A stretch of DNA of 64,000 bases from IMGVR_UViG_3300029911_000001:124001-188000, one strand, 5' to 3'; counted from the stretch's first letter, positions 12,302 through 63,310 are shown. Program-made: numbers and translations. Notes: a model not told the origin generated them from the letters alone.

Positions 12302-15300
12302 ATGTCAATTAAGGCCCTGCAATCTTACACGTTCCATTCGAAGTATGCCCGTTACAACCCTGAGCTAAAACGACGCGATACATGGTCAGAATCAAATGAT
12401 CGTGTGCTCAACATGCACCTGAGTCGCTATCCACAAATTGCCGAGGAACTGAACTGGGCATTCGAACAATCCAAAGCCAAGCGGGTACTTGGGAGCCAAC
12501 GGGCTCTCCAGTATGCTGGTACACCCGTGCTCCGCAAGCACGCTCGTGTTTACAATTGCACTGTCTCCTACTGCGACCGTCTCCGCTTCTTCCAAGAATC
12601 CCTATGGTTATTGCTGTGTGGCTCTGGTGTAGGGTTCTCCGTTCAGAAGCACCACGTTGCCAAACTGCCTGACTTCCTCGAAGGCCGTCAGTTGGGCGTC
12701 CCACAGCGTGAAGTTGAGTTCTACATCCCCGATGACATCGAGGGATGGGCTGATGCTCTCGGCAACCTGCTTGCCACGTACTTCCCTCACCCGGATTACC
12801 CGGAGTGTGCGGGTGCGAACATCAAGTTCAATTACAGCCTCATCCGTCCGAAGGGCTCCAAGCTTTCGTCCGGTGTAGGTAAGGCACCCGGCCCCGAACC
12901 ACTGGCTAAGTCACTGGAAGCCATCCGTGGACTCCTCGACCGCTGCTTGGCTGATGGACAGGCTCGTCTCCGTTCCATCGACGCCTACGACGTTGTGATG
13001 CACGCCAGCGATGCCGTGCTCTCAGGTGGCGTCCGTCGCTCAGCGACCATCTGCATCTTCTCGCCGGACGATGATTTGATGGCACGTGCCAAAATTGGCG
13101 ACTGGTACTACACCAACCCGCAGCGTGGCCGTTCCAACAACTCCGCGATGCTCGTGCGTAGCGCAACCAGCCGTGAAGACTTTCATGGACTAATGGGGTG
13201 GGTTAAGCAGTTTGGGGAACCGGGCTTTGTGTGGTCGGACTCCACTGAGATGATGTTTAATCCTTGTTTTCATCCTGAGGAAAGAATCTCCACCATAAAT
13301 GGGATGGAACGGCTGATTGATATGTTCCATACAGGTCAACCTAATCAGGTAGCTTATGATTCCCGTGCAGGTAAGTCCGATGAGCTTGACCTCAATCGCA
13401 AGGGGATTCAACTGTCCTCGGCATCAAAGGTCAAACTTACCCAAACTCAGGCCCCCTTGTTTCAGTTGAACACTGAGCATGGCCACACCCTCAGGGTCAC
13501 CGAGAACCACGAATTTCCGACCTTACGGGGGAGGCTGAAGCTAAGCTCTCTGGTACCCGGAGATACACTCCTACTCCCCTCGGCGGAACTCCCCTTTGGT
13601 AAGGACGGCTCGTTCGCCGCAGGTTTGGTACTCGGACTTATCACCGGGGACGGCTTCGTCAGTGGTCATCAAGCCTTCGTGGACGTGTGGAAAGCTGACT
13701 TCGATGTCTTAGACACGGTAAAGGAGTACATTCACTCGCTTATCGAACAGGTTCCTAGCAACGCCAATGGTGTCCGTGAGTATACCCAGTTGGATTGGGT
13801 GAAGCAGGGGGAGGACAAACGCAGGATAGGCGGACTGCGTCTCTATCGGTTCTTGAGGGAGAACTTGAACATCGAAGACCCGGCGACGATCAAGGATAAT
13901 ATTCCTGAGTGTGTATGGCGTGGGTGTCGGGAGATGGTGGTGGGTTACCTACAAGGACTTATGTTTGCAGACGGTGGCTTGAATCTGAGTGACCACAAAA
14001 AAGTACCTACTTTCTCTTGGCGACTTAACCAGAGCAATGAAGCCCTGCTGGTAGAGGTGCAGAGGTTGTTCGCGATGTTCGCGGTGGTTTCGAGGGTAAC
14101 TCCGCGTAGAAAGGCGGGGCGAACCCTTCTTCCCGATGGGCGCGGTGGCTCTAAACTCTATGCTACCAAAGACAACTTCGAACTCATTTTGAATCGACCT
14201 AATAGTATTAGGGCATACGAGGTCGTAGGGTGTTTCGGTCGCAAGAAGGATATCCTTCAGTCTCTGATGGGGTACTGTGGGACAAATTGTCGTAAACCGG
14301 AACGATTCATTACCAAAGTAAAATCCATCACACCTTGTGGTGTGTCCGATGTGTACTGCCTTACTCAATACACTTCCAACACCGTCATAGCAAATGGTTT
14401 GGTTACGGGTCAGTGTGTTGAAATTGGCATGTACCCGGTCGATGTCACCACTGGTCTCAGCGGATGGGCGTTCTGCAATCTCTGCGAAATCAATGGCAAG
14501 AAGTGCAAGACCAAGGAAGACTTCGCTATCGCTGCTAGGGCTGCTGCCATCATCGGCACGGCACAGGCTGGCTACACCGACTTCGAATACCTTGGTCAGA
14601 CTACCAAGAACATCGCCGACCGTGAGGCCCTTCTGGGTGTCAGCATCACCGGCATGATGGACTCGCCGGAGATTCTCTTCGACCCTAAAATTCAGCGTGA
14701 GATGGCACAGCTTGTTGTCGCCACCAACAAGGAAATCGCGGCGAAGATTGGTATCCGTCAGGCAGCACGTTGCACTTGCGTGAAGCCAGCCGGAACCACG
14801 TCCTGCATCCTCGGCACATCGAGCGGTATTCACGCTCACCACTCCAAGCGTTACATCCGCCGCGTTCAAGCCAACATGCTGGAAGCTCCATACCAGTTCT
14901 TGGCTGAGAAGAACCCGCGTGCGGTGGAGAAGAGCGTGTGGTCGAAGAATGGCACCGACTCGGTGATTGCATTTTGTATCGAGACGGCTGAAGGTGCTCG
15001 TACCCGCAAGGATATGACCGCCATCAAGCTGCTTGAGCATGTACGTTTGACGCAGAACAACTGGGTGGAAGCTGGCCGCAATGCTGAGCTTTGCACACAA
15101 CCCTATCTTCGTCACAACGTGTCGAACACCATCAACGTCCGCCCTGATGAATGGGACGAGGTTGAAGCCTACATCTACGAGCACCGTCAGGATTTCGCGG
15201 GTGTGTCCTTGCTTTCTAGCACGGGTGACCTTGATTATCCTCAGGCTCCCTTCAGTGCCATTCACACCCCGGCTGAAATCGTCAAGCTGTATGGCGACGG

Positions 15301-15724
15301 AAGCTTGATGGCTTCGGGTCTTATTGTCGATGGCCTCGCGGCGTTCGATAACAACCTATGGTTGGCTTGCGACTACGTGAACGGTGTCAACAAGCTGGAG
15401 TGCCCGGAACCGGTGGCAGTTGTTGACGATAACGGTAATGAGATTCACCCCACGGAAATCGAGATGGCTGAACGTGAGGAAGTCTTCAAGTGTGCTGTGA
15501 AGCGTGACTGGATTCGTCGTGCTCATCAGTTCTCTGACCGCTACTTCGAGGGCGACCGTAAGCTCATGAGTTACTGCCTGAAGGAAGTTCACAACTGGAA
15601 GTATTGGTGCGACCTTCAGCGTGAGTACGTCGATGTAGACTACAAAGACCTCATCGAAGAAGAAGACAACACCAAGATTCAGGACACGGTAGCTTGCGCT
15701 GGAGGTGTGTGTAGTTTTATGTAG
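12302..15724 (+). CDS. nrdJ: Class II (B12-dependent) ribonucleotide reductase with intein
   Basis: NCT, LLCGSGVGFS, GGVRRSA, NP/CVEI active site split by the intein, CVKPAGT, C-terminal CAGGVC; no class I Tyr-Tyr pair and no adjacent beta subunit. Confidence 0.85.
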   Translation: MSIKALQSYTFHSKYARYNPELKRRDTWSESNDRVLNMHLSRYPQIAEELNWAFEQSKAKRVLGSQRALQYAGTPVLRKHARVYNCTVSYCDRLRFFQESLWLLLCGSGVGFSVQKHHVAKLPDFLEGRQLGVPQREVEFYIPDDIEGWADALGNLLATYFPHPDYPECAGANIKFNYSLIRPKGSKLSSGVGKAPGPEPLAKSLEAIRGLLDRCLADGQARLRSIDAYDVVMHASDAVLSGGVRRSATICIFSPDDDLMARAKIGDWYYTNPQRGRSNNSAMLVRSATSREDFHGLMGWVKQFGEPGFVWSDSTEMMFNPCFHPEERISTINGMERLIDMFHTGQPNQVAYDSRAGKSDELDLNRKGIQLSSASKVKLTQTQAPLFQLNTEHGHTLRVTENHEFPTLRGRLKLSSLVPGDTLLLPSAELPFGKDGSFAAGLVLGLITGDGFVSGHQAFVDVWKADFDVLDTVKEYIHSLIEQVPSNANGVREYTQLDWVKQGEDKRRIGGLRLYRFLRENLNIEDPATIKDNIPECVWRGCREMVVGYLQGLMFADGGLNLSDHKKVPTFSWRLNQSNEALLVEVQRLFAMFAVVSRVTPRRKAGRTLLPDGRGGSKLYATKDNFELILNRPNSIRAYEVVGCFGRKKDILQSLMGYCGTNCRKPERFITKVKSITPCGVSDVYCLTQYTSNTVIANGLVTGQCVEIGMYPVDVTTGLSGWAFCNLCEINGKKCKTKEDFAIAARAAAIIGTAQAGYTDFEYLGQTTKNIADREALLGVSITGMMDSPEILFDPKIQREMAQLVVATNKEIAAKIGIRQAARCTCVKPAGTTSCILGTSSGIHAHHSKRYIRRVQANMLEAPYQFLAEKNPRAVEKSVWSKNGTDSVIAFCIETAEGARTRKDMTAIKLLEHVRLTQNNWVEAGRNAELCTQPYLRHNVSNTINVRPDEWDEVEAYIYEHRQDFAGVSLLSSTGDLDYPQAPFSAIHTPAEIVKLYGDGSLMASGLIVDGLAAFDNNLWLACDYVNGVNKLECPEPVAVVDDNGNEIHPTEIEMAEREEVFKCAVKRDWIRRAHQFSDRYFEGDRKLMSYCLKEVHNWKYWCDLQREYVDVDYKDLIEEEDNTKIQDTVACAGGVCSFM
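13265..14413 (+). mobile_element. 383-aa intein with LAGLIDADG homing endonuclease
   Basis: Starts CFHPEE, block B TENHEF, LGLITGDG and LQGLMFADG motifs, ends ANGLVTGQ|C; removal restores NPCVEI. Confidence 0.92.
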
Positions 15725-15792: not shown

Positions 15793-16095
15793 TTGGTGCC
15801 ATTTTCTAGCCATCCCGGTGAGACAAATCCTTTCTTTGGAAAGACCCACACTGATGAGGCTAAGAAATCTATCTCCCTAAAGAACAAAGGGAGGGTGGTG
15901 ACAACTATCCTTAGAAAGATTCGAGCAGAAAACGCAAACGGTAGTAATAACTCACAGTATGGTAAACGCTTTAAATTTGTTACAGACGGTAACGTGACCA
16001 AGAAGCTCCCTATAGATGAGGTGGATGCCTTCTTGTCTAGTCATGATGAGTTCAGTCTGGGAAACCCCAAAAGGAAAGGGTTACATGGAAACTAA
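15793..16095 (+). pseudogene. NUMOD3-only homing endonuclease remnant
   Basis: GETNPFFGKTHTDEAKKSIS and GSNNSQYGK repeats with no nuclease domain. Confidence 0.65.
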
Positions 16096-16369: not shown

Positions 16370-16388
16370 GTGTAGTTGAACAAAATGG

Positions 16389-16426
16389 AGACCGGCACGT
16401 CGCAACCGTGCCGGTCTTTTTGTTTT
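16389..16426 (+). terminator. Intrinsic terminator
   Basis: AGACCGGCACG/CGTGCCGGTCT stem plus T tract. Confidence 0.85.
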
Positions 16427-16803: not shown

Positions 16804-16848
16804 ATGGTTTCAGCACTTTGCGCTGTACCCTCCTGTATAATAGAGGGT

Positions 16849-17655
16849 ATGAAGATAACGTTCAACAACAAGACTCATTGGCGGTCAGACCACATCCGGG
16901 CGTTCATTGCACATGAACTGAAGGATGAGCGTCCCGACCTGTGCAAGCGTGGAGCCCCGGCCCTGAAGGTGAAGGTCACCTACACCCGACGTGCTGGTTC
17001 CTCATATAGCTCCGGCTGTGCCTACCTCAACTCAAACTGGATGAACATCCGACTCAGCAAGCATACCCCGGACAAGGTGGAACTTGGTCATGTCATTGCT
17101 CATGAGCTTGCCCACACCCGTGGGATGAACCATGATAAGATGCGTGGGAACTCCCGCTACAGCCGTGTCGGCAGCTATCGTGAAGTCCATGCTTGGGCCA
17201 ACGACCTTCCCCTCGAACGAGTGGAGAAGAAGTCGAGGAAGAAGCCGGTTGACCTGAAGCTTACTCACGCTCAGAAGATGCTCAAGGCTGCACTGACGCG
17301 GGAGAAGCGTGCCATCACCCTCCGCAAGAAATGGGCGGCTAAGGTGAAGTATTACACCAAGAAAGGGGAGACTCCCCGAGTCGTCAACTCTAACCCCTTC
17401 CGTCAAACCCTCGGTGAGTGGGTCGAAGCACGAGGCTTTCGACTGGAGGGTAGTGTAGGCGACTACGAGGTCTCCGCACCGGATGGCTTCAACTTGGGCG
17501 ATGGAACCCACAGCCGGTTATGCACAAACGCTGCTGATGTTCGGACTATGGTAGATTCGTTCTGCCTTCAACTCTGCTCGGAAGGCTGTGACTGCATGGA
17601 AAACAACACTGACCAAACTACGACCGACGACGGTATACTGGAGGTAACATGCTAA
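16849..17655 (+). CDS. HExxH zinc metallopeptidase-like protein (SprT/zincin-like)
   Basis: GHVIAHELAHTRGMNH; ATG 16849 just after TATAAT and GAGGG. Confidence 0.65.
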   Translation: MKITFNNKTHWRSDHIRAFIAHELKDERPDLCKRGAPALKVKVTYTRRAGSSYSSGCAYLNSNWMNIRLSKHTPDKVELGHVIAHELAHTRGMNHDKMRGNSRYSRVGSYREVHAWANDLPLERVEKKSRKKPVDLKLTHAQKMLKAALTREKRAITLRKKWAAKVKYYTKKGETPRVVNSNPFRQTLGEWVEARGFRLEGSVGDYEVSAPDGFNLGDGTHSRLCTNAADVRTMVDSFCLQLCSEGCDCMENNTDQTTTDDGILEVTC

Positions 17656-17948
17656 AACCTCGCTTTGACGAGACCATGAAGGGTCATCTCAAGACCCTCA
17701 GCCGTAGCAAGCCCACCTTGAAGTGCTCCAAGCACACCAAGTACAACCCTGCTCATGGTCGGGGAGCCATCACTGGCTCATGTAAAGGGTGCGAGGCTGC
17801 ACTGGAAGCCTATGAGGCGTTCATCGGGCTACGACAAGCCGTTGCCAAATACCTGACGTTGATTGAACCATACGAGACCGCTAAACCCCGGAGTAAGCAG
17901 TTGGTATCTGCCACTTCGACTACTCTACCTTATTTGCTGAAGATGTAG
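17649..17948 (+). CDS. Small Zn-binding hypothetical protein
   Basis: CSKH...CKGC; RBS GGAGG. Confidence 0.65.
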   Translation: MLKPRFDETMKGHLKTLSRSKPTLKCSKHTKYNPAHGRGAITGSCKGCEAALEAYEAFIGLRQAVAKYLTLIEPYETAKPRSKQLVSATSTTLPYLLKM

Positions 17949-17976
17949 TACACTCACCCGGACAGGAGTCTGACTG

Positions 17977-18579
17977 ATGACATTTGATAGGTACGGACGT
18001 AAACTGAAGAGACGCCGGACGTGGAAGGCTCTACCCCTACTCTGGATTGGTGCAGCAGTGGTAGGAGCCGCCATTGCCGCCCCGACATGCAGCAAGTTCA
18101 TCCCGACCACGACCGTGACCAAGGTGAAGAACCGTGTGAGTAAGACCACGGCAGACGCTTGGGCGAAGTGGCGTATCGCCCACCCCAACTGGAAGCCCAA
18201 TCCCAAGGTCGTTAGACCAAAGTACAAGATGACGACTCAGGAAGCTGTAGCTAAGGTAGAGTTCGCTTGCCAAGCTACTATTCTCGATGTGACCCCGCCA
18301 GAGATTCAACTGGATACGGTCTCGCCGCCCACCATTGAGTTGGCCCTGACCCCGGTCGAGCCTCCGCCTGTCACCCCTGATGTGGTAACCGACACTACGC
18401 CGGACACGCCTCCGGACACGCCCCTGACGCCTGTGCTGTTCACTGCACTGTCCTCACCGCCCACGCTCATCCCCTCGTCGCCCCTTGCCCCCACTCCTGA
18501 GCCGGGAAGCCTGTGGCTGATGGGCACTGGTTTGCTCTTCGTCGCAGCCGGTGTGCAGTATCAGAAAAGAAAAGTGTAG
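17977..18579 (+). CDS. PEP-CTERM sorting-domain protein
   Basis: C-terminus TPEPGSLWLMGTGLLFVAAGVQYQKRKV (PEP, TM helix, basic tail); N-terminal hydrophobic segment; Pro/Thr-rich linker. Confidence 0.8.
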   Translation: MTFDRYGRKLKRRRTWKALPLLWIGAAVVGAAIAAPTCSKFIPTTTVTKVKNRVSKTTADAWAKWRIAHPNWKPNPKVVRPKYKMTTQEAVAKVEFACQATILDVTPPEIQLDTVSPPTIELALTPVEPPPVTPDVVTDTTPDTPPDTPLTPVLFTALSSPPTLIPSSPLAPTPEPGSLWLMGTGLLFVAAGVQYQKRKV

Positions 18580-18998: not shown

Positions 18999-19053
18999 CT
19001 AAGTTAGAATCCAAACCAACCGAGGCCACCCTAACCGGGTGGCTTTCTTATTT
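18977..19053 (+). terminator. Overlapping antiterminator (18977-19027) and intrinsic terminator (19023-19053)
   Basis: Terminator AGGCCACCC-TAACC-GGGTGGCTT plus TCTTATTT; GGCCTTGG(18977) can pair with CCGAGGCC(19020). Confidence 0.8.
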
Positions 19054-19066
19054 GGTGGCAACAAAT

Positions 19067-19142
19067 GCGGGGGTAGATTAGCGGCTAAATCATCGCCCTT
19101 ACAAGACGACTATCGTGGGTTCGAGTCCCACCCTCCGCACCA
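19067..19142 (+). tRNA. tRNA-Val(UAC)
   Basis: Cloverleaf, loop CT-TAC-AA, encoded CCA. Confidence 0.9.
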
Positions 19143-19172
19143 AGATTCGCAGTATTAGATGTTCAGATGTAT

Positions 19173-19247
19173 GCGGGATTAGTTCAGTGGTAGAACGCTT
19201 CCTTGCCAAGGAAGAGGTCGAGGGTTCGAATCCCTCATCCCGCTCCA
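19173..19247 (+). tRNA. tRNA-Gly(GCC)
   Basis: CTTCC-TT-GCC-AA-GGAAG; CCA. Confidence 0.95.
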
Positions 19248-19309
19248 AAAGTTTAGAGTCTCAGTGACTCGATGATGTATAGGTATTTGACAATTTAGGT
19301 TTGAATTTT

Positions 19310-19383
19310 GGGGTCGTCGTTCAGTGGGAGGACAACACGCTTGCACCGTGTCAACAGGGGTTCGAATCCCCTCGGCTCCACCA
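19310..19383 (+). tRNA. tRNA-Ala(UGC)
   Basis: ACACG-CT-TGC-AC-CGTGT; G3.U70; CCA. Confidence 0.9.
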
Positions 19384-19391
19384 AAAACGCT

Positions 19392-19652
19392 CTAAATGTG
19401 GTAACGTCCACGTTGCAACGTCCCAGATTTGCAAATTGGGTGCACAAAGGGGATGAAGCCCGTCTTTGCTTGTAGCAACTCGGTGGAATTGTGGTTTTTG
19501 TTATAATTGTTTGAGGAGTGGTTGGTACATTTTCTACACCATGAATTAAGGGTTATAGTAGTACCATTCTTATTCCTTCTGGTACGAACCCCAAAATACT
19601 CCTTTGAGGCGGGATGGTTGGTGTTACATTTAGAACACAGCTTGGATTCCAT
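19392..19652 (-). pseudogene. Antisense Zn-finger ORF, probable HNH-type endonuclease remnant
   Basis: ATG with RBS GGAG; KLCSKC...WCRKC; no complete nuclease domain. Confidence 0.45.
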
Positions 19653-19701
19653 TGCTTCTCCTAAGTTAGCTAATACAATGGAATCCAATAGTTGAAAAGA
19701 T

Positions 19702-20030
19702 TGCACCAGAGACTTCGGACAATCGCGACGTGAGCGCAATACTCACTTCGAGGAAATTCGGGGCATCATAGAACAACCTAGTGGGTAACGCCCACGCAGT
19801 GGAACATCACTGACGACAAGTGCCACAGAGACGAGCCTCTTCAGTGAGGAGTGAAACGCGGTAAACTTCTAGGTGATGCAACTTCAAATAGGCCGACAGG
19901 TGCTGTTCGTACCGTTATGAATCGGCGGGTTGAGGGCTAGAGCGTTGTGGTAACACAACGTCGAGACGAATGATTGTCGAACCACCGAAAGGTGGGGAAC
20001 AGAACCCCGGTTATAGAAGTCTCTGGTGCA
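19702..20030 (+). ncRNA. rnpB: RNase P RNA (bacterial type A-like)
   Basis: 15-bp P1 TGCACCAGAGACTTC/GAAGTCTCTGGTGCA; GAGGAAATTCGGGC (19750), AAGTGCCACAGA (19818), GTGAAACGCGGTAAAC (19851), ACAGAACCCCGGTTA (19999). Confidence 0.92.
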
Positions 20031-20040
20031 GTAAAGTTTT

Positions 20041-20157
20041 GAGTGCTCGTACCTCAGTGAACGCCGATGCGATGTTTGCCATCGGGGCGGTAGAGGACGG
20101 CCTACCCGAGCAGTTAGCGGATGGAAGAAGTCATGGGTTCGAACCCCATCGGCACTC
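20041..20157 (+). ncRNA. tRNA-like RNA with a hairpin inserted in the D-loop and no clear anticodon arm
   Basis: D-stem CCTC/GAGG, T-arm ATGGG-TTCGAAC-CCCAT, acceptor-like GAGTGC/GCACTC. Confidence 0.5.
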
Positions 20158-20271
20158 AAATAAGATGGACGACACCTGTCCAAGGACGTTCCACATGTGA
20201 GTGTGGTGTAGGCAAGCGGATATGCTCCGAAGCTGAGTCCAGTGGTGTGACGCCGGGGAGAGCACCGGGCT

Positions 20272-20345
20272 GCGGGATTAGTGTAGTGGTAACACGTCAT
20301 CCTTCCAAGTTGAAGTCAGGGGTTCAAGTCCCCTATCCCGCTCCA
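20272..20345 (+). tRNA. tRNA-Gly(UCC)
   Basis: Loop CT-TCC-AA; CCA. Confidence 0.92.
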
Positions 20346-20438
20346 AGTTCAAGCCATCCCAATACTGACGCACAAAGGCGGGTACGGTTCTAGGGTAATG
20401 GTGCGGGAGGATAACCTAAACCGCAAGTTTAGATTCAT

Positions 20439-20515
20439 GCACCGATAGCCAAGACGGTAAGGCGACAGATTGCAACCCTGTTAATGCGGGAGTTCGATTC
20501 TCCCTCGGTGCTCCA
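20439..20515 (+). tRNA. tRNA-Cys(GCA)
   Basis: Loop TT-GCA-AC; U73; CCA. Confidence 0.92.
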
Positions 20516-20524
20516 AGTTTCAAA

Positions 20525-20600
20525 GGGCGATTAGCTCAGTTGGGAGAGCGTTTCCATGGCATGGAAAAGGTCAAGGGTTCGAGCCCCTTATTGTCCACCA
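20525..20600 (+). tRNA. tRNA-Ala(GGC)
   Basis: TTTCC-AT-GGC-AT-GGAAA (A32-U38); G3.U70; CCA. Confidence 0.93.
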
Positions 20601-20879
20601 GTTTAGAAGAGGATGGAAAACTGGAAAGTTCCCGGTAACGGTGACACAATCCGGCTCACTGGCTCTCTAAAAGACACTGCACGTCTCTAAATGGCAGCGT
20701 AAGCGGCACGACACGTCCACCAAGTTTGGGGTAGCACTAGCGCACACCGCATATCAGGCGCGTGTCGGCAATAGGCTTGCAGATAGAAGTAAAGCTGCGG
20801 AACACAGTTTGAACTCGTGGTACGGACACAGTTTCGTCGTCAGCCGGTGAGCTAACACCGCTGGTGCCACGCGAAGTTT

Positions 20880-20954
20880 GGTGCTGTATCATAATGCCAA
20901 TGAACTCCCCTGTCGAGGGAGCTTATGAGGGTTGAACTCCCTTCAGCACCGCCA
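20880..20954 (+). tRNA. tRNA-Asp(GUC), atypical D/T loops
   Basis: CTCCC-CT-GTC-GA-GGGAG; G73; D-loop lacks GG; T-loop TTGAACT. Confidence 0.75.
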
Positions 20955-21014
20955 TTTTTTCAACTACAGAACCCTTATATGTAAGTCACTTCTGATACAT
21001 ATAAGGGTTCGATA

Positions 21015-21635
21015 ATGGCTAAAAAGAAAGAGAAAGAAGAAGCAATCAGGTTACGTGTTGAACACCGTCTCTCATTGGAAGTTATTTCTAAACAGTTAGG
21101 TGTATCTCAGAGTAGTTGCTCCTTATGGTTGAGAGGTTACCCTCTATCGGAGCAAGAAAAGAGCACTCGCAAACCCCCCTCTACGAAAGGTATTGCGCGT
21201 AAGATTCGGGGGGATAGGTCAAAGTTTTCTAATGTAGTTGACGGGCAGGAACTTACAAAATCTCGTAAGGGGAGAATAGCTGAATCTGCAATTCTATTTC
21301 GGTTGGCTCTTCATGGTCTGACCCCCTACGGTTCCCCGTTTGATGGTGATAAGACCGATTGGGTAGTAGAGAATGCACAAGGTAGAACTATGAAGGTACA
21401 AGTGAGGTGGGCGCGTGAGGCTAGAAAAGGGCTACCTTTTATCTCACTTCGAATTTCGGATGGGAGGCACAACACTCGTCGGTACACGGAAAATGAATTT
21501 GACTTTATTGTGGCTTACGACCTGTACACAGATACGGCTTATGTATTTAATCAAGAGGATGTAAGGAACAATACCGCACTTATCGCAGTATCAGAGGAGA
21601 GGGCGGAGAAGTGGCAACAGTTACTGGATTTTTGA
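21015..21635 (+). CDS. Free-standing PD-(D/E)XK endonuclease with N-terminal HTH
   Basis: KGRIAE...TDWVVE...KVQVR...FDFIVAY pattern; inserted in the tRNA array. Confidence 0.75.
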   Translation: MAKKKEKEEAIRLRVEHRLSLEVISKQLGVSQSSCSLWLRGYPLSEQEKSTRKPPSTKGIARKIRGDRSKFSNVVDGQELTKSRKGRIAESAILFRLALHGLTPYGSPFDGDKTDWVVENAQGRTMKVQVRWAREARKGLPFISLRISDGRHNTRRYTENEFDFIVAYDLYTDTAYVFNQEDVRNNTALIAVSEERAEKWQQLLDF

Positions 21636-21648
21636 TGAGGAAACAAGT

Positions 21649-21852
21649 ATGTGTCAAGCGTTTACACCGGACATGCGGAACTTCGATGAGAAGCCGTACA
21701 CACCGGATGAGCAGCGAGTAGTCAAGTACCTAGTTGAACTCACCAATGGAACGATTGGCGGCGGTGACGACCCTATCGGGTTCCTCATCGCGAGTCATGC
21801 AACGCTTTCTGACTTGAATGTGAAGCGTTGTCGAGAGGAAGCACATGGTTGA
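21649..21852 (+). CDS. Small hypothetical protein
   Basis: ATG with RBS GAGGA. Confidence 0.55.
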   Translation: MCQAFTPDMRNFDEKPYTPDEQRVVKYLVELTNGTIGGGDDPIGFLIASHATLSDLNVKRCREEAHG

Positions 21853-22009
21853 CTTTGAAGCAAACGGTTGGCGTAAGTTGACAGCAGAAGAGCAGGAAGG
21901 CATTCGTGAGTTTGAGCGAGTGATGAAGGAAGAGACCATACCTGCCATCGTGAAGACTATCCGTCTCCGTCAGGAATTGGCTAATGAATATCGAGGAATT
22001 TTGTACTAA
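21845..22009 (+). CDS. Small hypothetical protein (54 aa), not in the ORF track
   Basis: MVDFEANGWRKLTAEEQEG...; RBS GAGGA; overlaps the previous stop. Confidence 0.55.
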   Translation: MVDFEANGWRKLTAEEQEGIREFERVMKEETIPAIVKTIRLRQELANEYRGILY

Positions 22010-22014
22010 TGTTT

Positions 22015-22091
22015 GGGGATGTAACTCAGTCGGTCAGAGTATTCGCCTGTCGAGCGAAAAGTCGCGGGTTCGAACCCCGTCATCCCCGCCA
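22015..22091 (+). tRNA. tRNA-Asp(GUC)
   Basis: TTCGC-CT-GTC-GA-GCGAA; canonical; CCA. Confidence 0.95.
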
Positions 22092-22096
22092 AGTGT

Positions 22097-22200
22097 GAGA
22101 TGTAGTGTCAAGGTGTGGCGTTTGTATACGAACGTGAGCATCATTAGAACGGGGCCTTGTTGCGGCTCTGGTGTGGGTGAAAATCCCGCCGTCTCCGCCA
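22097..22200 (+). ncRNA. Degenerate tRNA-like unit
   Basis: GAGATG/CGTCTC acceptor-like, ends GCCA; T-like arm GTGGG-TGAAAAT-CCCGC; no 7-nt anticodon loop. Confidence 0.4.
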
Positions 22201-22271
22201 GTTTCAAATGTTGCAGCACGGTTTCAGTGAGTCCTGAAATGGCTGAAGGTTGGAGTAAGCTGATTGAATCT

Positions 22272-22346
22272 ACACCCGTAGCTCAGAGATAGAGCGTCTC
22301 CTTGACGTGGAGAGGGTCGGGGGTTTAATTCCCTCCGGGTGTACCA
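22272..22346 (+). tRNA. tRNA-Val(GAC)
   Basis: TCTCC-TT-GAC-GT-GGAGA; CCA. Confidence 0.92.
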
Positions 22347-22374
22347 AAGCAGGAGAGTTTGAAGTTACCAGAGT

Positions 22375-22432
22375 CGGGATGTAGCTCAGTGGTAGAGCCT
22401 AAAAGTCGCAGGTTCGATTCCTGCCTTTCCTA
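22375..22432 (+). pseudogene. tRNA-like unit lacking the anticodon arm
   Basis: Canonical D arm GCTC-AGTGGTA-GAGC joined by CTAAAAGTC to canonical T arm GCAGG-TTCGATT-CCTGC; weak acceptor stem. Confidence 0.7.
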
Positions 22433-22644
22433 TACGACGCTCTGGTGGACTGAAAGGCGGGAAGCGTATCGTGCTCGTATTCACATTGCGCGTACCGCCC
22501 AAGTTTATTAATGATGAGTTTCAAGTTCGAGAGTTGGAACCAGCAGCGGAACATATAGCAGCCCTCACAGCTATCGCGTGCTAGGTAAGGGCAAGGACGA
22601 AGAGGCAGCATGGAAAGATGCTGTCCGTCGCAAGAAACAGATTT

Positions 22645-22723
22645 GGGGCAAGGGACTGCCGGGGGTGGTCACCTCATTCGCAATGAGGAATTCAGCGGGG
22701 TTCAAGTCCCCGTTGCTCCACCA
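22645..22723 (+). tRNA. tRNA-Ala(CGC), atypical D arm
   Basis: CCTCA-TT-CGC-AA-TGAGG; GGGGCAA/TTGCTCC with G3.U70; CCA. Confidence 0.85.
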
Positions 22724-22731
22724 AAAGTTTC

Positions 22732-22806
22732 GGGGTTATAGCTCAGAGGGAGAGCACCGCATTTGCAATGCGGGGGTCGAGATTTCAAAATTCTCTAACT
22801 CCACCA
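22732..22806 (+). tRNA. tRNA-Ala(UGC), second copy
   Basis: CCGCA-TT-TGC-AA-TGCGG; G3.U70; CCA. Confidence 0.88.
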
Positions 22807-22826
22807 CTTTATTAGTCAAAAGTTTC

Positions 22827-22904
22827 GGGCGGTCTGGAATAAGAGTTTCAGACAGGCTGCACATAGAGGCAGAAGGGTGAGTTCGAATCCCTTCACGTCC
22901 ACCA
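22827..22904 (+). ncRNA. Degenerate tRNA-like unit with Ala-type acceptor end
   Basis: GGGCG/CGTCC-A-CCA (G3.U70); GTTCGAAT in an enlarged T-loop; anticodon unresolved. Confidence 0.45.
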
Positions 22905-22921
22905 ATTTTGAGGTTGATTGA

Positions 22922-23179
22922 ATGAAGTTCACACGTCGTCAGTTCTTCGCAGGGCTCCCGGTATTCATCATGCCGGGGTGGATGAAGGCGATAGCCTCAT
23001 GGTTCCAGCCTGAGGTCGCCGTAGTAAAGGCTCCTCTAATCAAGGGCTCGACCCAACTAAATGATGTCCTGCCAAAGCGTGTGATGGTACCAACGTTCGA
23101 AATAGTTTCGTGTCCGACAATCTTGCTCAAGGAAATCAAGGAGCGTAGGTTCAGGATACAAAGTGGGCCGGTAGCATAA
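22922..23179 (+). CDS. Small protein with twin-arginine-like N-terminus
   Basis: MKFTRRQFFAG; RBS GAGG. Confidence 0.55.
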   Translation: MKFTRRQFFAGLPVFIMPGWMKAIASWFQPEVAVVKAPLIKGSTQLNDVLPKRVMVPTFEIVSCPTILLKEIKERRFRIQSGPVA

Positions 23180-23243
23180 TGGGAATGCACATTCCTTGCG
23201 GCGAGTAACCGCACCCACCCGGCTCCAGTTTGAAAGGAGCTTC

Positions 23244-23426
23244 ATGGCTAAGTACACAGTACGTAACAAGGAAGGGCACCTTCTCGGAAGGACTGATAGC
23301 CCTGAGGTTTTGGTAGAAGAGATTTGCGAAGTATGTGAGAAGCAAGGAATTATTTACCACGTACACCCCGAGTCGGAAGAGCATAAAGGGTCTCCTAGCT
23401 TTCGACCAATGAAGTTTAGCAGATGA
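23244..23426 (+). CDS. Small hypothetical protein
   Basis: ATG with RBS AAGGAG. Confidence 0.55.
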   Translation: MAKYTVRNKEGHLLGRTDSPEVLVEEICEVCEKQGIIYHVHPESEEHKGSPSFRPMKFSR

Positions 23427-23452
23427 AATGGAAAAGCACGAAGGTTAAGTTT

Positions 23453-23527
23453 GGCCCTGTCCTCCAACGGTCAGGAGAGTGGGTTCTCAACCCGACAACA
23501 AGGGTTCAACTCCCTTCAGGGCCACCA
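23453..23527 (+). tRNA. tRNA-Glu(CUC)
   Basis: Loop TT-CTC-AA; GGCCCTG/CAGGGCC; CCA. Confidence 0.88.
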
Positions 23528-23534
23528 GTTTTAT

Positions 23535-23609
23535 GGCGCATTCGTTCATTGGTTAGGACCGGTGTTTTTCAAGCACCAGAAGAGGTTTCGATTACCTCAT
23601 GCGCTACCA
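23535..23609 (+). tRNA. tRNA-Glu(UUC)
   Basis: GGTGT-TT-TTC-AA-GCACC; CCA. Confidence 0.88.
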
Positions 23610-23992
23610 ATTTCGCTGGGAGGTCGGTGTGGACTCAGGCGACTCGCTGCAACCGAGTAGGCGTTGCGGGAGATATGCGAGGGAAAGATTGATCTTCCTG
23701 TCAGAACATCGGCAGTTGAAGTGGGCACCGGGGCTGAAGGGTCATCGCTAGAACAGGGTGGCCCTTCAGCAAAGTCTGCCGACCATTTGATACAATAGCT
23801 GGATGAGACGAGGCTACCAATGAACTGTACTAAGTGTGGTGAATCAGCCCTCGGAGTAGCTCTTGATGGACTACCTTACTGTCATCGCACAGAGTGTATT
23901 TTATGGAAGGTGGAATTGCAACGGTATCGGGATTTGCAAGCTCTCCCTTTTCCAGCACCGCAGCGACCGTTTGCAAAAAGTTTGGTGTTTAA

Positions 23993-24068
23993 GCGGGATT
24001 AGCTCAGTTGGTAGAGCGTTTCCTTCCCAAGGAAAATGTCGCGGGTTCGAGTCCCGCATCCCGCTCCA
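23993..24068 (+). tRNA. tRNA-Gly(CCC)
   Basis: TTTCC-TT-CCC-AA-GGAAA; canonical; CCA. Confidence 0.95.
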
Positions 24069-24086: not shown

Positions 24087-24794
24087 ATGAGCTTAGCATT
24101 GTACCCCACCGGCCAGCTTAGATTCTGGACGGAACAAGAAATCTCTCTTCGCGATGGTCTCATCCATCGTCTCTTCCATGTTGTGAAAGCTCCGCTTCAG
24201 ACTCTGAACAAGGCGTGGCGTTTCGAACGTGTTGAAGGCCCCCTACTCACTCCTGCCGACTACATCAGCCCAGCCTACACCGAGGATGACCTATGGGTAA
24301 CCAAGGGTCTAATCGCGGCTCAGGGTGTCGCCATGAGAGCGGAGACCACCGCATCCAGTTACATCTACGCCAAGCATCTGATGTCTCAGGAAGGCGGTAG
24401 CAATAAGCTACCTCTCTGCGTGTGGCAGTCAGGCAAGAGCTTCCGCAAGGAAGAGAGCGATGGTGCATCCGCATCCCGGCTCCGCTTCTTCGAGTTCTAT
24501 CAGCTTGAGTTCCAGTGCATCTACAGCAAGACCACCGGAGCCGATTACGTCGCCCCGGTCACATCTCGCGTGATGAAGGAACTTGAACTCATCACGGGGC
24601 ACAAAGCCCGTCTCGTTCGCTCCGACCGTCTCCCCTCTTATAGTGAAGCCACCTTCGATGTTGAAGTAGACTTCAACGGGCACTGGCGTGAGATGTGCAG
24701 CATTTCACAACGCACCGATTTCGAGGGTGCCAAGGTGTTGGAAGTCGCCATCGGTCTCGACCGGCTGGTAGCAGTCATCGGGGGTGGTGTCTAG
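24087..24794 (+). CDS. Minimal class II aaRS catalytic core, alpha2-type GlyRS-like, no anticodon-binding domain
   Basis: MRAETT, QSGKSFRKE, RFFEFYQLEFQ, LPSYS, EMCSISQRTDF, LEVAIGLDRL. Confidence 0.78.
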   Translation: MSLALYPTGQLRFWTEQEISLRDGLIHRLFHVVKAPLQTLNKAWRFERVEGPLLTPADYISPAYTEDDLWVTKGLIAAQGVAMRAETTASSYIYAKHLMSQEGGSNKLPLCVWQSGKSFRKEESDGASASRLRFFEFYQLEFQCIYSKTTGADYVAPVTSRVMKELELITGHKARLVRSDRLPSYSEATFDVEVDFNGHWREMCSISQRTDFEGAKVLEVAIGLDRLVAVIGGGV

Positions 24795-28730: not shown

Positions 28731-28854
28731 CGGTCGTATCCTCGTCTCAGGTATCCCAAATAAGGGGTCTATCCATGAGCTTGATAGCCAAAATTATTTT
28801 GTGACTACCGACGCCTATAAGTATAGGGGCATCTCGCCTCGTTATGGGAGTCAC

Positions 28855-63068: not shown

Positions 63069-63155
63069 GGGCAGATGCGTGAGTGGCTAAAACGGGCTGG
63101 CTGTAACCCAGCTTCCCTAGTGGATTCGGAGGTTCAAATCCTCCTCTGCCCACCA
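63069..63155 (+). tRNA. tRNA-Tyr(GUA)
   Basis: GCTGG-CT-GTA-AC-CCAGC; long variable arm; CCA. Confidence 0.93.
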
Positions 63156-63166
63156 AAATTGAATAC

Positions 63167-63254
63167 GCAAGTAAGGCGACTATCGGTTGGTCGCACCGGG
63201 CTGTAAACTCGTTGCCCTAAAAAGCCGCTGGGGGTTCGACTCCCTCTACTTGCA
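63167..63254 (+). tRNA. tRNA-Tyr(GUA), second divergent copy, CCA not encoded
   Basis: GCAAGTA/TACTTGC-A; loop CT-GTA-AA; long variable arm. Confidence 0.8.
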
Positions 63255-63310
63255 CTTTCGTGACTACCGACCTCTTTAAGTAGAGGTATCTCTTGGAGGT
63301 CGGTAGGTTC

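What the first reader, a model, noticed from the sequence alone, without database searches (positions are those of the whole stretch)
17977..18579. Phage-encoded PEP-CTERM protein
Seen: a canonical PEP-TM-basic tail. Established: PEP-CTERM proteins are exosortase substrates linked to exopolysaccharide/surface layers in diderm bacteria. Inference: the phage uses the host exosortase to display a protein on the infected cell (receptor masking or EPS modulation). The LxGTGL-type tail hints at an Acidobacteriota-like host.
Basis: partly seen in the sequence, partly recalled or inferred. Interest (0 to 1): 0.6.

Follow-up and report, generated by a model that had tools for sequence, protein, structure and literature searches.

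The report
Jumbo-phage copy of host PEP-CTERM protein
An uncultured peat-bog phage of about 430 kb, related to the Acidobacteria phage Tunturi 5, carries a conserved gene for a small secreted protein ending in the tag that the likely host's exosortase uses to send proteins to the cell surface, so the phage probably plants its own protein in the infected cell's envelope.

Summary
ORF 17977-18579 (+, 200 aa) ends in PEP, a hydrophobic helix and a basic cluster. It reaches the curated cut-offs of PF07589 (22.1 vs 20.7 bits) and TIGR02595 (16 vs 16).

It is a real phage gene, not a misassembly. The identical protein sits in the same context in many independent peat assemblies, including a 431,749-bp contig. 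Diverged syntenic copies (43-72% identity) occur in related phages under purifying selection (dN/dS about 0.2; 0.10-0.16 in the head).

It belongs to a small undescribed family: signal peptide, a basic ~65-aa two-cysteine head, an acidic proline-rich stalk and a PEP-CTERM tail. Apart from unattributed metagenome proteins, this family was found only in these phages and in a subset of Acidobacteriaceae.

The phage shares 72 ORFs with Tunturiibacter phage Tunturi_5. Tunturi_5 also carries two unannotated PEP-CTERM ORFs and no exosortase. All five candidate-host genomes tested have an exosortase; the one locus examined is an XrtA-like EPS locus.

Use of the host exosortase is a well-founded inference. 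The biological role (surface or EPS remodelling, exclusion) is untested.

The parts
17961..17965 (+). Shine-Dalgarno-like AGGAG, 8 nt before the ATG
   Evidence: Read directly from the sequence.
17977..18579 (+). Complete CDS, 200 aa plus stop: phage-borne PEP-CTERM protein
   Evidence: ORF list. PF07589 22.1 bits and TIGR02595 16 bits. 40 homologues. dN/dS 0.19-0.24 against phage orthologues.
17977..18084 (+). Residues 1-36: basic N-terminus plus hydrophobic core. Probably a Sec signal peptide (A-I-A then A-P-T-C), or else an uncleaved signal anchor. The basic N-terminal motif is conserved in phage copies only.
   Evidence: Alignment A1. AlphaFold helix 14-34. dN/dS 0.15-0.17. Cleavage is inferred, not tested.
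18085..18276 (+). Residues 37-100: conserved basic 'head' with two invariant cysteines (C38, C98) and a W/K/P/N-rich core. No named family matches it.
   Evidence: 14 invariant columns. Net charge +10 here and +4 to +13 across the family. dN/dS 0.10-0.16. Two helices, pLDDT 74-85. No Pfam, NCBIfam, PHROG, PDB-sequence or Foldseek match.
18277..18489 (+). Residues 101-171: acidic, proline-rich, disordered stalk
   Evidence: 27% Pro, net charge -9, and the same pattern in all 35 relatives. pLDDT mostly below 60. Least constrained part of the gene, dN/dS 0.26-0.46.
18490..18576 (+). Residues 172-200: PEP-CTERM sorting signal (PEP at 174-176, transmembrane helix, K-R-K cluster)
   Evidence: HMM matches at residues 172-190. 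AlphaFold helix 178-199, pLDDT above 90. E175 and P176 are invariant.
17649..17948 (+). 99-aa cysteine-rich ORF immediately upstream. It is the conserved neighbour of the PEP-CTERM gene in all four phage lineages examined; function unknown.
   Evidence: tblastn 52-78% identity at the same position in L004, L023 and L025. No family hit.
16804..17655 (+). 283-aa YgjP-like (HExxH) metallopeptidase ORF. Its end overlaps the start of the 99-aa ORF. Present in the closer relatives, absent in L004.
   Evidence: PF01863 28 bits against cut-off 26. 70% identity in L023 and L025, no match in L004.
16387..16419 (+). Terminator-like hairpin (13-bp stem plus T run), possibly the upstream boundary of the transcription unit
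   Evidence: Consensus scan only; 5 sites found against 3.6 expected from shuffles, so weak evidence.
19022..19046 (+). Terminator-like hairpin (10-bp stem plus T run) between the PEP-CTERM gene and the tRNA array that starts at 19067
   Evidence: Consensus scan. tRNA positions.

Best explanation
The ORF is a functional gene of a phage of about 430 kb that infects Acidobacteriaceae in acidic peat. It is the phage branch of a small, undescribed protein family that was otherwise placed only in a subset of one GTDB genus-level group of Acidobacteriaceae. In those bacteria the gene occupies a fixed chromosomal site between dsbD and mgsA. The gene was exchanged once between host and phage lineages, long ago, most simply from host to phage.

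Proposed mechanism (inferred). The protein is made in the infected cell and exported through Sec by its N-terminal signal. It is held in the inner membrane by its C-terminal helix, with the basic cluster on the cytoplasmic side. The host's XrtA-like exosortase then recognises the P-E-P motif. As proposed for PEP-CTERM proteins in general, it cleaves the tail and passes the mature protein of about 138 residues outward, to the outer envelope or exopolysaccharide layer. The mature protein is a basic, disulphide-locked head on an acidic proline-rich stalk. The phage encodes no exosortase, so it would depend on the host enzyme.

The phage head keeps every invariant residue of the bacterial proteins, so it most likely binds the same partner. 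That partner may be acidic exopolysaccharide. The protein would thereby supplement, replace or perturb the host protein at the surface of the infected cell. The benefit to the phage (exclusion of further phages, or altered EPS or aggregation) is the least certain step.
For: Shown: the PEP-CTERM signal reaches curated cut-offs.

The gene is phage-borne. The identical product occurs in 47 index blocks. All 8 places shown, including the 431,749-bp contig, have the same neighbours, and 22 peat-metagenome runs hold the stretch. Syntenic orthologues at 43-72% identity follow the helicase, loader and class II RNR genes in L004, L023 (405-kb contig) and L025.

Selection: dN/dS is 0.19-0.24 overall and 0.10-0.16 in the head, with dS about 1. 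In the 41%-GC relative L004 the gene has GC3 0.29, which argues for long residence in phages.

Family and host: all 16 genome hits are Acidobacteriaceae or Granulicella MAGs. The flanking dsbD-like and mgsA-like genes each recur in 14 of 17 bacterial loci. The family has 60 cluster representatives among 1.84 billion. It was found in 14 of 101 genomes of the genus, 3 of 201 of the family and 2 of 301 of the phylum. The phage copies form one split with 100/99 support.

Phage kinship: the UvsX-like protein is 41.5% identical to that of Tunturi_5, the next-best phage being 27.8%. 72 of 238 ORFs match Tunturi_5 in collinear blocks.

Exosortase: none in G000 or in the complete Tunturi_5 genome. It is present in 5 of 5 candidate-host genomes. 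In the one locus examined it lies with EpsI, PrsT, an EPS exporter and a chain-length determinant. Those genomes have 2-15 PEP-CTERM hits each. The phage tail fits their tail pattern.

Model of PEP-CTERM processing: PMC1569441. Experimental roles of exosortase and PEP-CTERM proteins in floc, biofilm and motility: PMC9850573, PMC12188702.
Against: There are no expression data: none of the holding runs is RNA. Export, cleavage and localisation are untested.

The host is inferred, not demonstrated. No CRISPR-spacer evidence was obtained, and G000 is only 74% complete, so an exosortase in the missing part cannot be excluded.

TIGR02595 is met only at its cut-off. The complex prediction of tail with exosortase gave no verdict.

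The phage-specific conserved basic N-terminus, constrained as strongly as the head, is unusual for a cleaved signal peptide. It could mean the N-terminal helix stays in the membrane.

The tree is unrooted, so phage-to-bacterium transfer is not excluded. The function of the bacterial family is itself unknown.
Confidence: 0.6

Rival explanations
1. Exosortase decoy or blocker. The phage protein is recognised by the host exosortase, but its purpose is to occupy or jam the enzyme. Host PEP-CTERM proteins, and the EPS layer that depends on them, would then fail to assemble, easing lysis and virion escape from the capsule or floc.
For: The phage tail is a good match to the host tail pattern. Phage-copy tails score 18.8-26.2 bits against 18.0-24.7 for six sampled bacterial copies. 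The host exosortase lies inside an EPS export locus. Two related phages each carry two different PEP-CTERM ORFs.
Against: A decoy needs only the tail, yet the head is the most constrained part (dN/dS 0.10-0.16) and keeps all 14 family invariants. The difference in tail scores is small and the sample is tiny.
Confidence: 0.12
2. Two-anchor inner-membrane protein. The N-terminal helix is not cleaved and the C-terminal helix merely anchors the protein, with no exosortase processing. The head and stalk then loop into the periplasm and act there, for example in lysis timing, as a spanin-like link, or on periplasmic redox or envelope proteins.
For: The basic N-terminal motif is conserved in phage copies only, with dN/dS 0.15-0.17, which is unusual for a cleaved signal. 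AlphaFold gives confident helices at both ends. The bacterial homologues sit next to dsbD and have two invariant cysteines.
Against: E-P of the P-E-P motif is invariant in 35 of 35 sequences; a plain anchor would not need it. There is no lipobox: T, V or L precedes the cysteine, so it is not like a unimolecular spanin. The neighbours are replication genes and tRNAs, not a lysis cassette. The bacterial homologues are chromosomal genes outside prophages.
Confidence: 0.13
3. Neutral passenger. The gene was picked up from a host and has no role for the phage.
For: Gene GC is 58.9% against 51.2% for the window, closer to the bacterial copies at 59-66%. A second PEP-CTERM gene in the same genome is frameshifted, which shows that such cargo can decay.
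Against: The position is retained in at least four phage lineages whose synonymous sites are at or near saturation, and dN/dS is about 0.2. Composition is fully adapted in the 41%-GC relative. Much of the excess GC comes from Pro and Ala codons.
Confidence: 0.08
4. Assembly artefact. A piece of host DNA was joined into a viral contig.
For: The homologues are bacterial, and the record is a metagenome assembly.
Against: The same junctions appear in many independent assemblies from JGI, ENA and Logan. Both flanks are phage genes shared with relatives. The protein is only about 40-45% identical to any bacterial copy, and the phage copies form their own clade.
Confidence: 0.02

Closest known systems
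PEP-CTERM / exosortase (EpsH, XrtA) protein-sorting system of diderm bacteria (PMC1569441); characterised substrates such as the floc protein PepA (PMC9850573)
   Same: C-terminal P-E-P, transmembrane helix and basic cluster. N-terminal export signal. No internal transmembrane segment. A cargo domain without known homology. Association with an exosortase and EPS locus in the presumed host.
   Different: The gene is in a virus genome that has no exosortase or EPS genes of its own. There is no match to PepA or any named PEP-CTERM subfamily beyond the tail; all such hits cover only the last ~20 residues and lie far below their cut-offs.
Unnamed Acidobacteriaceae family at the dsbD-mgsA locus (P0006-P0040, L006-L021)
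   Same: Full-length homology at 30-47% identity. All 14 invariant head residues, the same stalk composition and the same tail.
   Different: The phage copies form a separate long branch. They have a different, conserved basic N-terminus and sit in a replication and tRNA region rather than the dsbD-mgsA site. The function of the bacterial family is unknown as well.
Tunturiibacter phage Tunturi_5 gp97 and gp179 (PP885688.1), annotated as hypothetical proteins
   Same: The phage is related: 72 shared ORFs. Both proteins are about 200 aa, with a signal peptide and a tail reading A-P-T-P-E-P...L-G-T-G-L. They score 18.4 and 19.2 bits for TIGR02595 against a cut-off of 16. Tunturi_5 has no exosortase. 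gp97 also has a two-cysteine head and lies among helicase genes.
   Different: Head homology is not established. BLASTP gives E 0.09. Head-only HMMs give no hit at E up to 10 or E 0.57. The hhalign probability of 95% is driven largely by the tail. The genes are at non-syntenic positions. The Tunturi paper does not mention PEP-CTERM.
Phage-encoded surface-sorted exclusion proteins that use a host sorting pathway: T5 Llp (PMC9586334), Cor (PMC13673623)
   Same: The concept is the same: a small phage protein carries a host sorting signal, is delivered to the envelope by host machinery, and acts at the cell surface during infection.
   Different: Those are lipoproteins, with a lipobox, sorted by Lgt, Lsp and Lol, and they have a proven receptor-blocking function. 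Here there is no lipobox and no sequence similarity (no PHROG hit), the sorting signal is different, and no function has been shown.
PEP-CTERM-domain protein HOG10 of the virus-like IME1 elements of Dehalococcoides (bioRxiv 10.64898/2026.09.15.751708)
   Same: It is the only report found in the searchable literature of a PEP-CTERM domain on a virus-like mobile element.
   Different: It is a small integrative element, not a tailed jumbo phage, in a different host phylum. It is mentioned in one sentence as a domain annotation, and no link to an exosortase is discussed.

Membership tests
PEP-CTERM sorting-domain proteins (PF07589 / TIGR02595) | The HMM match reaches the curated cut-off | tested here: met
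   PF07589 22.1 bits against 20.7. TIGR02595 16 against 16, exactly at the cut-off, and 20.6 bits in the six-frame genome scan.
PEP-CTERM sorting-domain proteins (PF07589 / TIGR02595) | The motif lies at the extreme C-terminus: P-E-P, then a transmembrane helix, then a basic cluster | tested here: met
   PEP at residues 174-176, helix at 178-199, K-R-K at 197-199 of 200. E-P is invariant in 35 relatives.
PEP-CTERM sorting-domain proteins (PF07589 / TIGR02595) | N-terminal signal peptide and no internal transmembrane segment (PMC1569441) | tested here: inconclusive
   A basic N-region, a 17-residue hydrophobic core and an A-I-A site are present, and there is no other helix long enough to span a membrane. 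No signal-peptide predictor was available, and the conserved phage-specific N-terminus leaves an uncleaved anchor possible.
PEP-CTERM sorting-domain proteins (PF07589 / TIGR02595) | Co-occurrence with an exosortase (EpsH family) and EPS genes in the same organism | tested here: inconclusive
   Not met in the phage genome itself (fragment 74% complete), nor in the complete relative Tunturi_5. Met in 5 of 5 candidate-host genomes; the XrtA-like EPS locus was confirmed in one of them. The host assignment is inferred.
PEP-CTERM sorting-domain proteins (PF07589 / TIGR02595) | Exosortase-dependent C-terminal processing and export | not testable with these tools
   This needs expression in wild-type and exosortase-mutant cells. 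The complex prediction gave no verdict.
Acidobacteriaceae dsbD-adjacent PEP-CTERM family (unnamed; alignments A1 and A2) | Head domain with 14 invariant residues, including two cysteines and the H-P-x-W-K-P-N core | tested here: met
   All invariants are present. The head-only HMM scores the window ORF at 121.7 bits.
Acidobacteriaceae dsbD-adjacent PEP-CTERM family (unnamed; alignments A1 and A2) | Basic head, acidic proline-rich stalk and PEP-CTERM tail in a protein of about 200 aa | tested here: met
   Head charge +10, stalk charge -9 with 27% Pro, within the family ranges.
Acidobacteriaceae dsbD-adjacent PEP-CTERM family (unnamed; alignments A1 and A2) | Chromosomal position between dsbD and mgsA | tested here: not met
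   The phage copy lies after the RNR gene and small ORFs and before a tRNA array. It is a separate, phage-resident branch of the family.
Phage exclusion lipoproteins (Llp, Cor) and unimolecular spanins | Lipobox with the invariant cysteine preceded by G, A or S | tested here: not met
   The residue before C38 is T; it is V or L in the other phage copies and T, A or I in the bacterial copies of A1.
Phage exclusion lipoproteins (Llp, Cor) and unimolecular spanins | Sequence similarity to known phage families, or position in a lysis cassette | tested here: not met
   No PHROG hit. No tblastn hit in 50,697 phage records. The neighbours are replication genes and tRNAs.

The most novel reading that the evidence does not exclude
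Jumbo phages of Acidobacteriaceae routinely exploit the host exosortase pathway. They carry several unrelated cargo proteins fitted with the host's PEP-CTERM tag. Two phage genomes hold four such ORFs, three intact and one decayed, and neither genome has an exosortase. The phages would use these proteins to rebuild the exopolysaccharide or outer-envelope layer of the infected cell, for example to exclude other phages or to change aggregation. That would be the first described case of a virus feeding its own substrates into exosortase sorting. It would be testable in the culturable pair Tunturi_5 and Tunturiibacter psychrotolerans.
Probability: 0.35. Interest if true: 0.7.

Novelty: new variant of a known kind. 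Interest (0 to 1): 0.5.

Why it matters
Exosortase sorting is widespread in environmental diderm bacteria, but it is poorly understood. The acceptor and final destination of most PEP-CTERM proteins are unknown, and few substrates have a phenotype.

A small substrate that a virus has kept under selection, and that has a matching host counterpart, would be a compact natural probe of this pathway. The related PEP-CTERM ORFs in the culturable phage Tunturi_5 (gp97, gp179) could be studied at the bench.

It would also add a new route to the list of host envelope-sorting pathways that phages borrow; the known examples use lipoprotein sorting. It concerns Acidobacteriaceae, abundant EPS-producing bacteria of peat and tundra soils, whose phage biology has barely been studied (PMC11924767).

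In addition, the family's narrow distribution gives a specific host prediction for a phage of about 430 kb that recurs across many peat metagenomes.

If the protein turns out not to be processed, the finding reduces to an ordinary host-derived membrane protein gene.

Tried and rejected
- **Naming the head domain.** There was no hit beyond the tail in Pfam, NCBIfam or PHROGs. A PDB sequence-profile search gave nothing (best E 0.75). The AlphaFold model is weak (mean pLDDT 64.9, two short helices), and Foldseek against PDB found nothing at E 0.001 or better. The ESM Atlas returned only PEP-CTERM clusters, the top one mostly Acidobacteriota.
- **Homology of Tunturi_5 gp97 to this family.** It looked convincing by eye and scored 95% in hhalign. 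A tail-only protein, gp179, already gets 89%. BLASTP gives E 0.09. Head-only HMMs give no hit at E up to 10 or E 0.57. I do not claim homology.
- **Docking of tail and exosortase.** The complex-prediction job scored 0.26 and 0.20 against a mark of 0.34 and gave no verdict. It counts neither for nor against binding.
- **Expression.** None of the 22 holding runs is RNA. Read laying was therefore not used, because contigs of DNA runs would add nothing beyond.
- **Cultured phages.** tblastn of the protein against 50,697 phage records gave no match.
- **Lipoprotein or unimolecular-spanin reading.** Rejected, because there is no lipobox.
- **Programmed frameshift in the second PEP-CTERM gene.** I saw no slippery heptamer at the -1 junction, so I treat it as a fixed frameshift.
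- **Stronger tail in phage than in bacterial copies.** The difference is too small, and six bacterial copies are too few, to claim it.
- **Lysogeny.** No tyrosine integrase was found in the 231-kb fragment, but the fragment is incomplete.

Full report
**1. The observation**

The finding's coordinates are exactly one ORF: ATG at 17977, stop at 18577-18579, 200 aa. An AGGAG lies 8 nt upstream of the start. The last 27 residues are P-E-P, a hydrophobic stretch containing G-T-G-L, and then K-R-K-V.

- Pfam PF07589 scores 22.1 bits against a gathering score of 20.7.
- TIGR02595 scores 16 bits, exactly at its cut-off.
- A six-frame scan of the whole virus record gives 20.6 bits, E 3.2e-4 per genome, with no hit in 14 control genomes.
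- All named PEP-CTERM subfamilies match only the tail and lie far below their cut-offs.

So this is a PEP-CTERM protein with an unnamed cargo domain.

**2. It is a phage gene, not host DNA**

The window is bases 124001-188000 of a 231,108-bp IMG/VR record that CheckV rates 74% complete. Around the gene lie a DnaB-like helicase, a DnaC-like loader and an intein-containing class II ribonucleotide reductase. Also present are a UvsX-like recombinase, SbcC-like and SbcD-like ORFs, and 16 tRNA genes.

The identical 200-aa product is indexed in 47 blocks of public assemblies. All 8 places shown have the same neighbours, including a 431,749-bp contig. Twenty-two peat-metagenome runs hold the stretch.

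Diverged orthologues (72, 69, 65 and 43% identity) were found. The three whose contigs I fetched sit in the same place in related phages: after helicase, loader, RNR and small ORFs, always preceded by the same 99-aa ORF.

Between these copies synonymous sites are near or beyond saturation. dS is about 1 among the closer copies and cannot be computed for L004. dN/dS is 0.19-0.24 overall, 0.10-0.16 in the head domain and 0.26-0.46 in the linker.

In the relative with 41% GC the gene has GC3 0.29, so it has taken on that phage's composition. In the window it is 58.9% GC against 51.2% for the window, partly because of Pro and Ala codons. Misassembly and recent passenger DNA are therefore excluded for practical purposes.

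**3. The protein family**

A word-based search found 40 relatives of about 200 aa. Their alignment shows one architecture:

- a signal peptide;
- a head of about 65 residues with 14 invariant positions, including two cysteines and a W/K/P/N-rich core;
- a variable proline-rich linker;
- the PEP-CTERM tail, with E-P invariant.

The head is basic in every member (+4 to +13). The linker is acidic (-5 to -14) with 16-32% Pro.

A head-only profile search of 1.84 billion cluster representatives found only 60 proteins at E 0.001 or better. Almost all have the same layout, apart from fragments. No Pfam, NCBIfam, PHROG, PDB-sequence or Foldseek match names the head. AlphaFold gives two short helices of moderate confidence between two confident terminal helices.

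**4. Where the family lives**

All 16 hits in species-representative genomes are Acidobacteriaceae or Granulicella MAGs, many from bogs and peat. There the gene lies downstream of a full-length dsbD (DsbD_N, DsbD_TM and thioredoxin domains) and next to mgsA on the opposite strand. Each of these two neighbours recurs in 14 of 17 loci.

Sampling with the head profile found the family in 14 of 101 genomes of the same GTDB genus. It was in 3 of 201 genomes of the family and 2 of 301 of the phylum. It is therefore a narrow, patchy lineage gene.

In a maximum-likelihood tree the five phage copies form one split (100/99) on a long branch away from all bacterial rows. That means one ancient exchange. 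The fixed chromosomal site suggests host to phage, but the tree is unrooted and the reverse direction is not excluded.

**5. Host and phage kinship**

The UvsX-like protein's best match among 50,697 phage records is Tunturiibacter phage Tunturi_5, at 41.5% identity over 91% of the query. The next-best phage is 27.8%. Tunturi_5 is a cultured 309-kb myovirus-like jumbo phage of an Acidobacteriaceae strain (PMC11924767).

Across the genome, 72 of 238 crude ORFs of the record match Tunturi_5 at a mean 42% identity, in collinear blocks. Together with the family's distribution, this makes an Acidobacteriaceae host very likely.

The motif itself fits. In five candidate-host genomes, 18 of the 20 best-scoring PEP-CTERM tails read L-G-T-G, and 10 read G-T-G-L. 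I did not test whether this distinguishes the phylum from others.

**6. Exosortase**

No PF09721 match exists in the 231-kb record or in the complete Tunturi_5 genome.

All five Acidobacteriaceae genomes that carry the bacterial homologue have an exosortase at about 250 bits. They also have 2-15 PEP-CTERM hits each.

One such locus was examined:

- an XrtA-like exosortase: 203.8 bits against the XrtA cut-off of 208, and 200.9 against 105.6 for the general exosortase model;
- EpsI;
- the TPR protein PrsT (340.7 against 312.2);
- matches below their cut-offs to an EPS exporter and a chain-length determinant;
- a PEP-CTERM protein.

The phage protein, if processed, must use the host enzyme. This is inference: a complex prediction of tail with exosortase gave no verdict, and no RNA data exist.

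**7. Likely mechanism**

*Shown:* the sequence anatomy, conservation, selection and genomic context.

*Inferred from the published model of PEP-CTERM processing (PMC1569441):*

- Sec export;
- signal cleavage near A-I-A, two residues before the first cysteine;
- tethering by the C-terminal helix, with K-R-K inside the cell;
- recognition of P-E-P by the exosortase, removal of the tail and transfer outward.

The mature product would be about 138 residues: a basic, probably disulphide-locked head on an acidic proline-rich stalk.

The phage head keeps all family invariants, so it probably engages the same partner as the host protein. An acidic polysaccharide is a reasonable guess from the charge pattern, and no more than that. 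The gene is co-oriented with replication genes and lies before a tRNA array, between two terminator-like hairpins. That suits expression in the infected cell rather than a virion role.

Benefits such as exclusion of other phages or altered EPS or aggregation are plausible by analogy with phage lipoproteins such as T5 Llp (PMC9586334). They are untested.

**8. A recurring theme**

The same phage genome has a second PEP-CTERM tail (25.7 bits) at G000:C1:49556-49627. Its reading frame is separated by a -1 shift from an upstream 135-aa ORF that has a canonical signal peptide. The 135-aa product is identical on 22 contigs, so the frameshift is real and fixed. It is probably a decayed gene.

Tunturi_5 carries two intact PEP-CTERM ORFs, gp97 and gp179. 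Both are annotated as hypothetical, score 18.4 and 19.2 bits, and have tails very like those of the window phage. The Tunturi paper contains no mention of PEP-CTERM or exosortase.

gp97 resembles the window protein in layout. However, homology of the heads is not supported statistically.

**9. Rivals**

- Exosortase decoy: disfavoured, because the head is the most constrained part.
- Uncleaved two-anchor membrane protein: kept alive by the phage-specific, conserved basic N-terminus, but it does not explain the invariant E-P.
- Neutral passenger: disfavoured by synteny and selection.
- Misassembly: refuted.

**10. Novelty**

Full-text searches found no report of a PEP-CTERM gene encoded by a tailed phage. 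The nearest is a one-line domain annotation on a virus-like element of Dehalococcoides.

The protein is a member of the PEP-CTERM class by sequence features. What is new is its residence in a virus that lacks the sorting enzyme, its descent from a specific host surface-protein family, and its recurrence in this phage group.

I rate it a new variant of a known kind, of moderate interest. Interest is raised by the availability of a culturable related phage-host pair. It is limited by the absence of any functional evidence.

**Procedural points**

- No alternative genetic code was needed.

Noticed in passing
G000:C1:49538-50136 (-), which is L001 1483-2081 (-); outside the window: A second PEP-CTERM gene in the same phage (tail 25.7 bits) is split by a -1 frameshift from its signal-peptide-bearing 135-aa N-terminal ORF. 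The 135-aa product is identical on 22 contigs, so the break is real. Together with a 311-aa ORF, it forms an insertion between genes that are adjacent in Tunturi_5.
   Followed up: partly
L036 15741-16379 (Tunturi_5 gp179) and L038 1489-2085 (-) (Tunturi_5 gp97): The cultured Acidobacteriaceae jumbo phage Tunturi_5 has two intact ORFs with signal peptide and PEP-CTERM tail. Both are annotated as hypothetical and are not discussed in its paper. The complete genome has no exosortase.
   Followed up: yes
window 12302-15724: The class II ribonucleotide reductase is interrupted by an intein with a LAGLIDADG homing endonuclease (1140 aa). Relatives L023 and L025 have intein-free versions of 760 and 763 aa, while L004 has the intein. 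A small NUMOD3 ORF follows at 15793-16095.
   Followed up: partly
window 19067-24068 and 63069-63255: There are sixteen tRNA genes. Fourteen form an array starting 21 nt after the terminator-like hairpin behind the PEP-CTERM gene, interspersed with small ORFs; one of these (21015-21635) matches PDDEXK_5 and phrog_5018. Two tRNA-Tyr genes lie near the window's end. ORF 24087-24794 has a weak class II aminoacyl-tRNA synthetase core match, below the cut-off.
   Followed up: no
window 28801-37275: A giant ORF of 2824 aa has no Pfam match at E 1e-4.
   Followed up: partly
window 17977-18030 (residues 1-18) and the same region in P0002-P0005 and P0066: Phage copies share a conserved, strongly basic N-terminal motif (D-x-[YF]-G-R-[KR]-L-[KR]-R) that the bacterial copies lack. 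It is as constrained as the head (dN/dS about 0.16), which is odd for a signal-peptide n-region.
   Followed up: partly
L006-L020 (Acidobacteriaceae loci), about 0.3-0.4 kb upstream of the homologue: The bacterial homologues, which have two invariant cysteines, lie directly downstream of a full-length dsbD in the same orientation. The dsbD-like neighbour recurs in 14 of 17 loci. This could be a functional link or mere synteny among close relatives.
   Followed up: partly
L004 (contig Ga0480578_0000610, 78 kb): The most diverged phage relative has only 41% GC, against 51-54% in the others and 60-64% in the candidate-host loci, yet it keeps the gene. This hints at a different host or a long separate history.
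   Followed up: no
window 16804-17655: A YgjP-like HExxH metallopeptidase ORF sits two genes upstream, and its end overlaps the start of the 99-aa ORF. It is conserved in L023 and L025 but missing in L004. Any link to the PEP-CTERM protein is unknown.
   Followed up: partly
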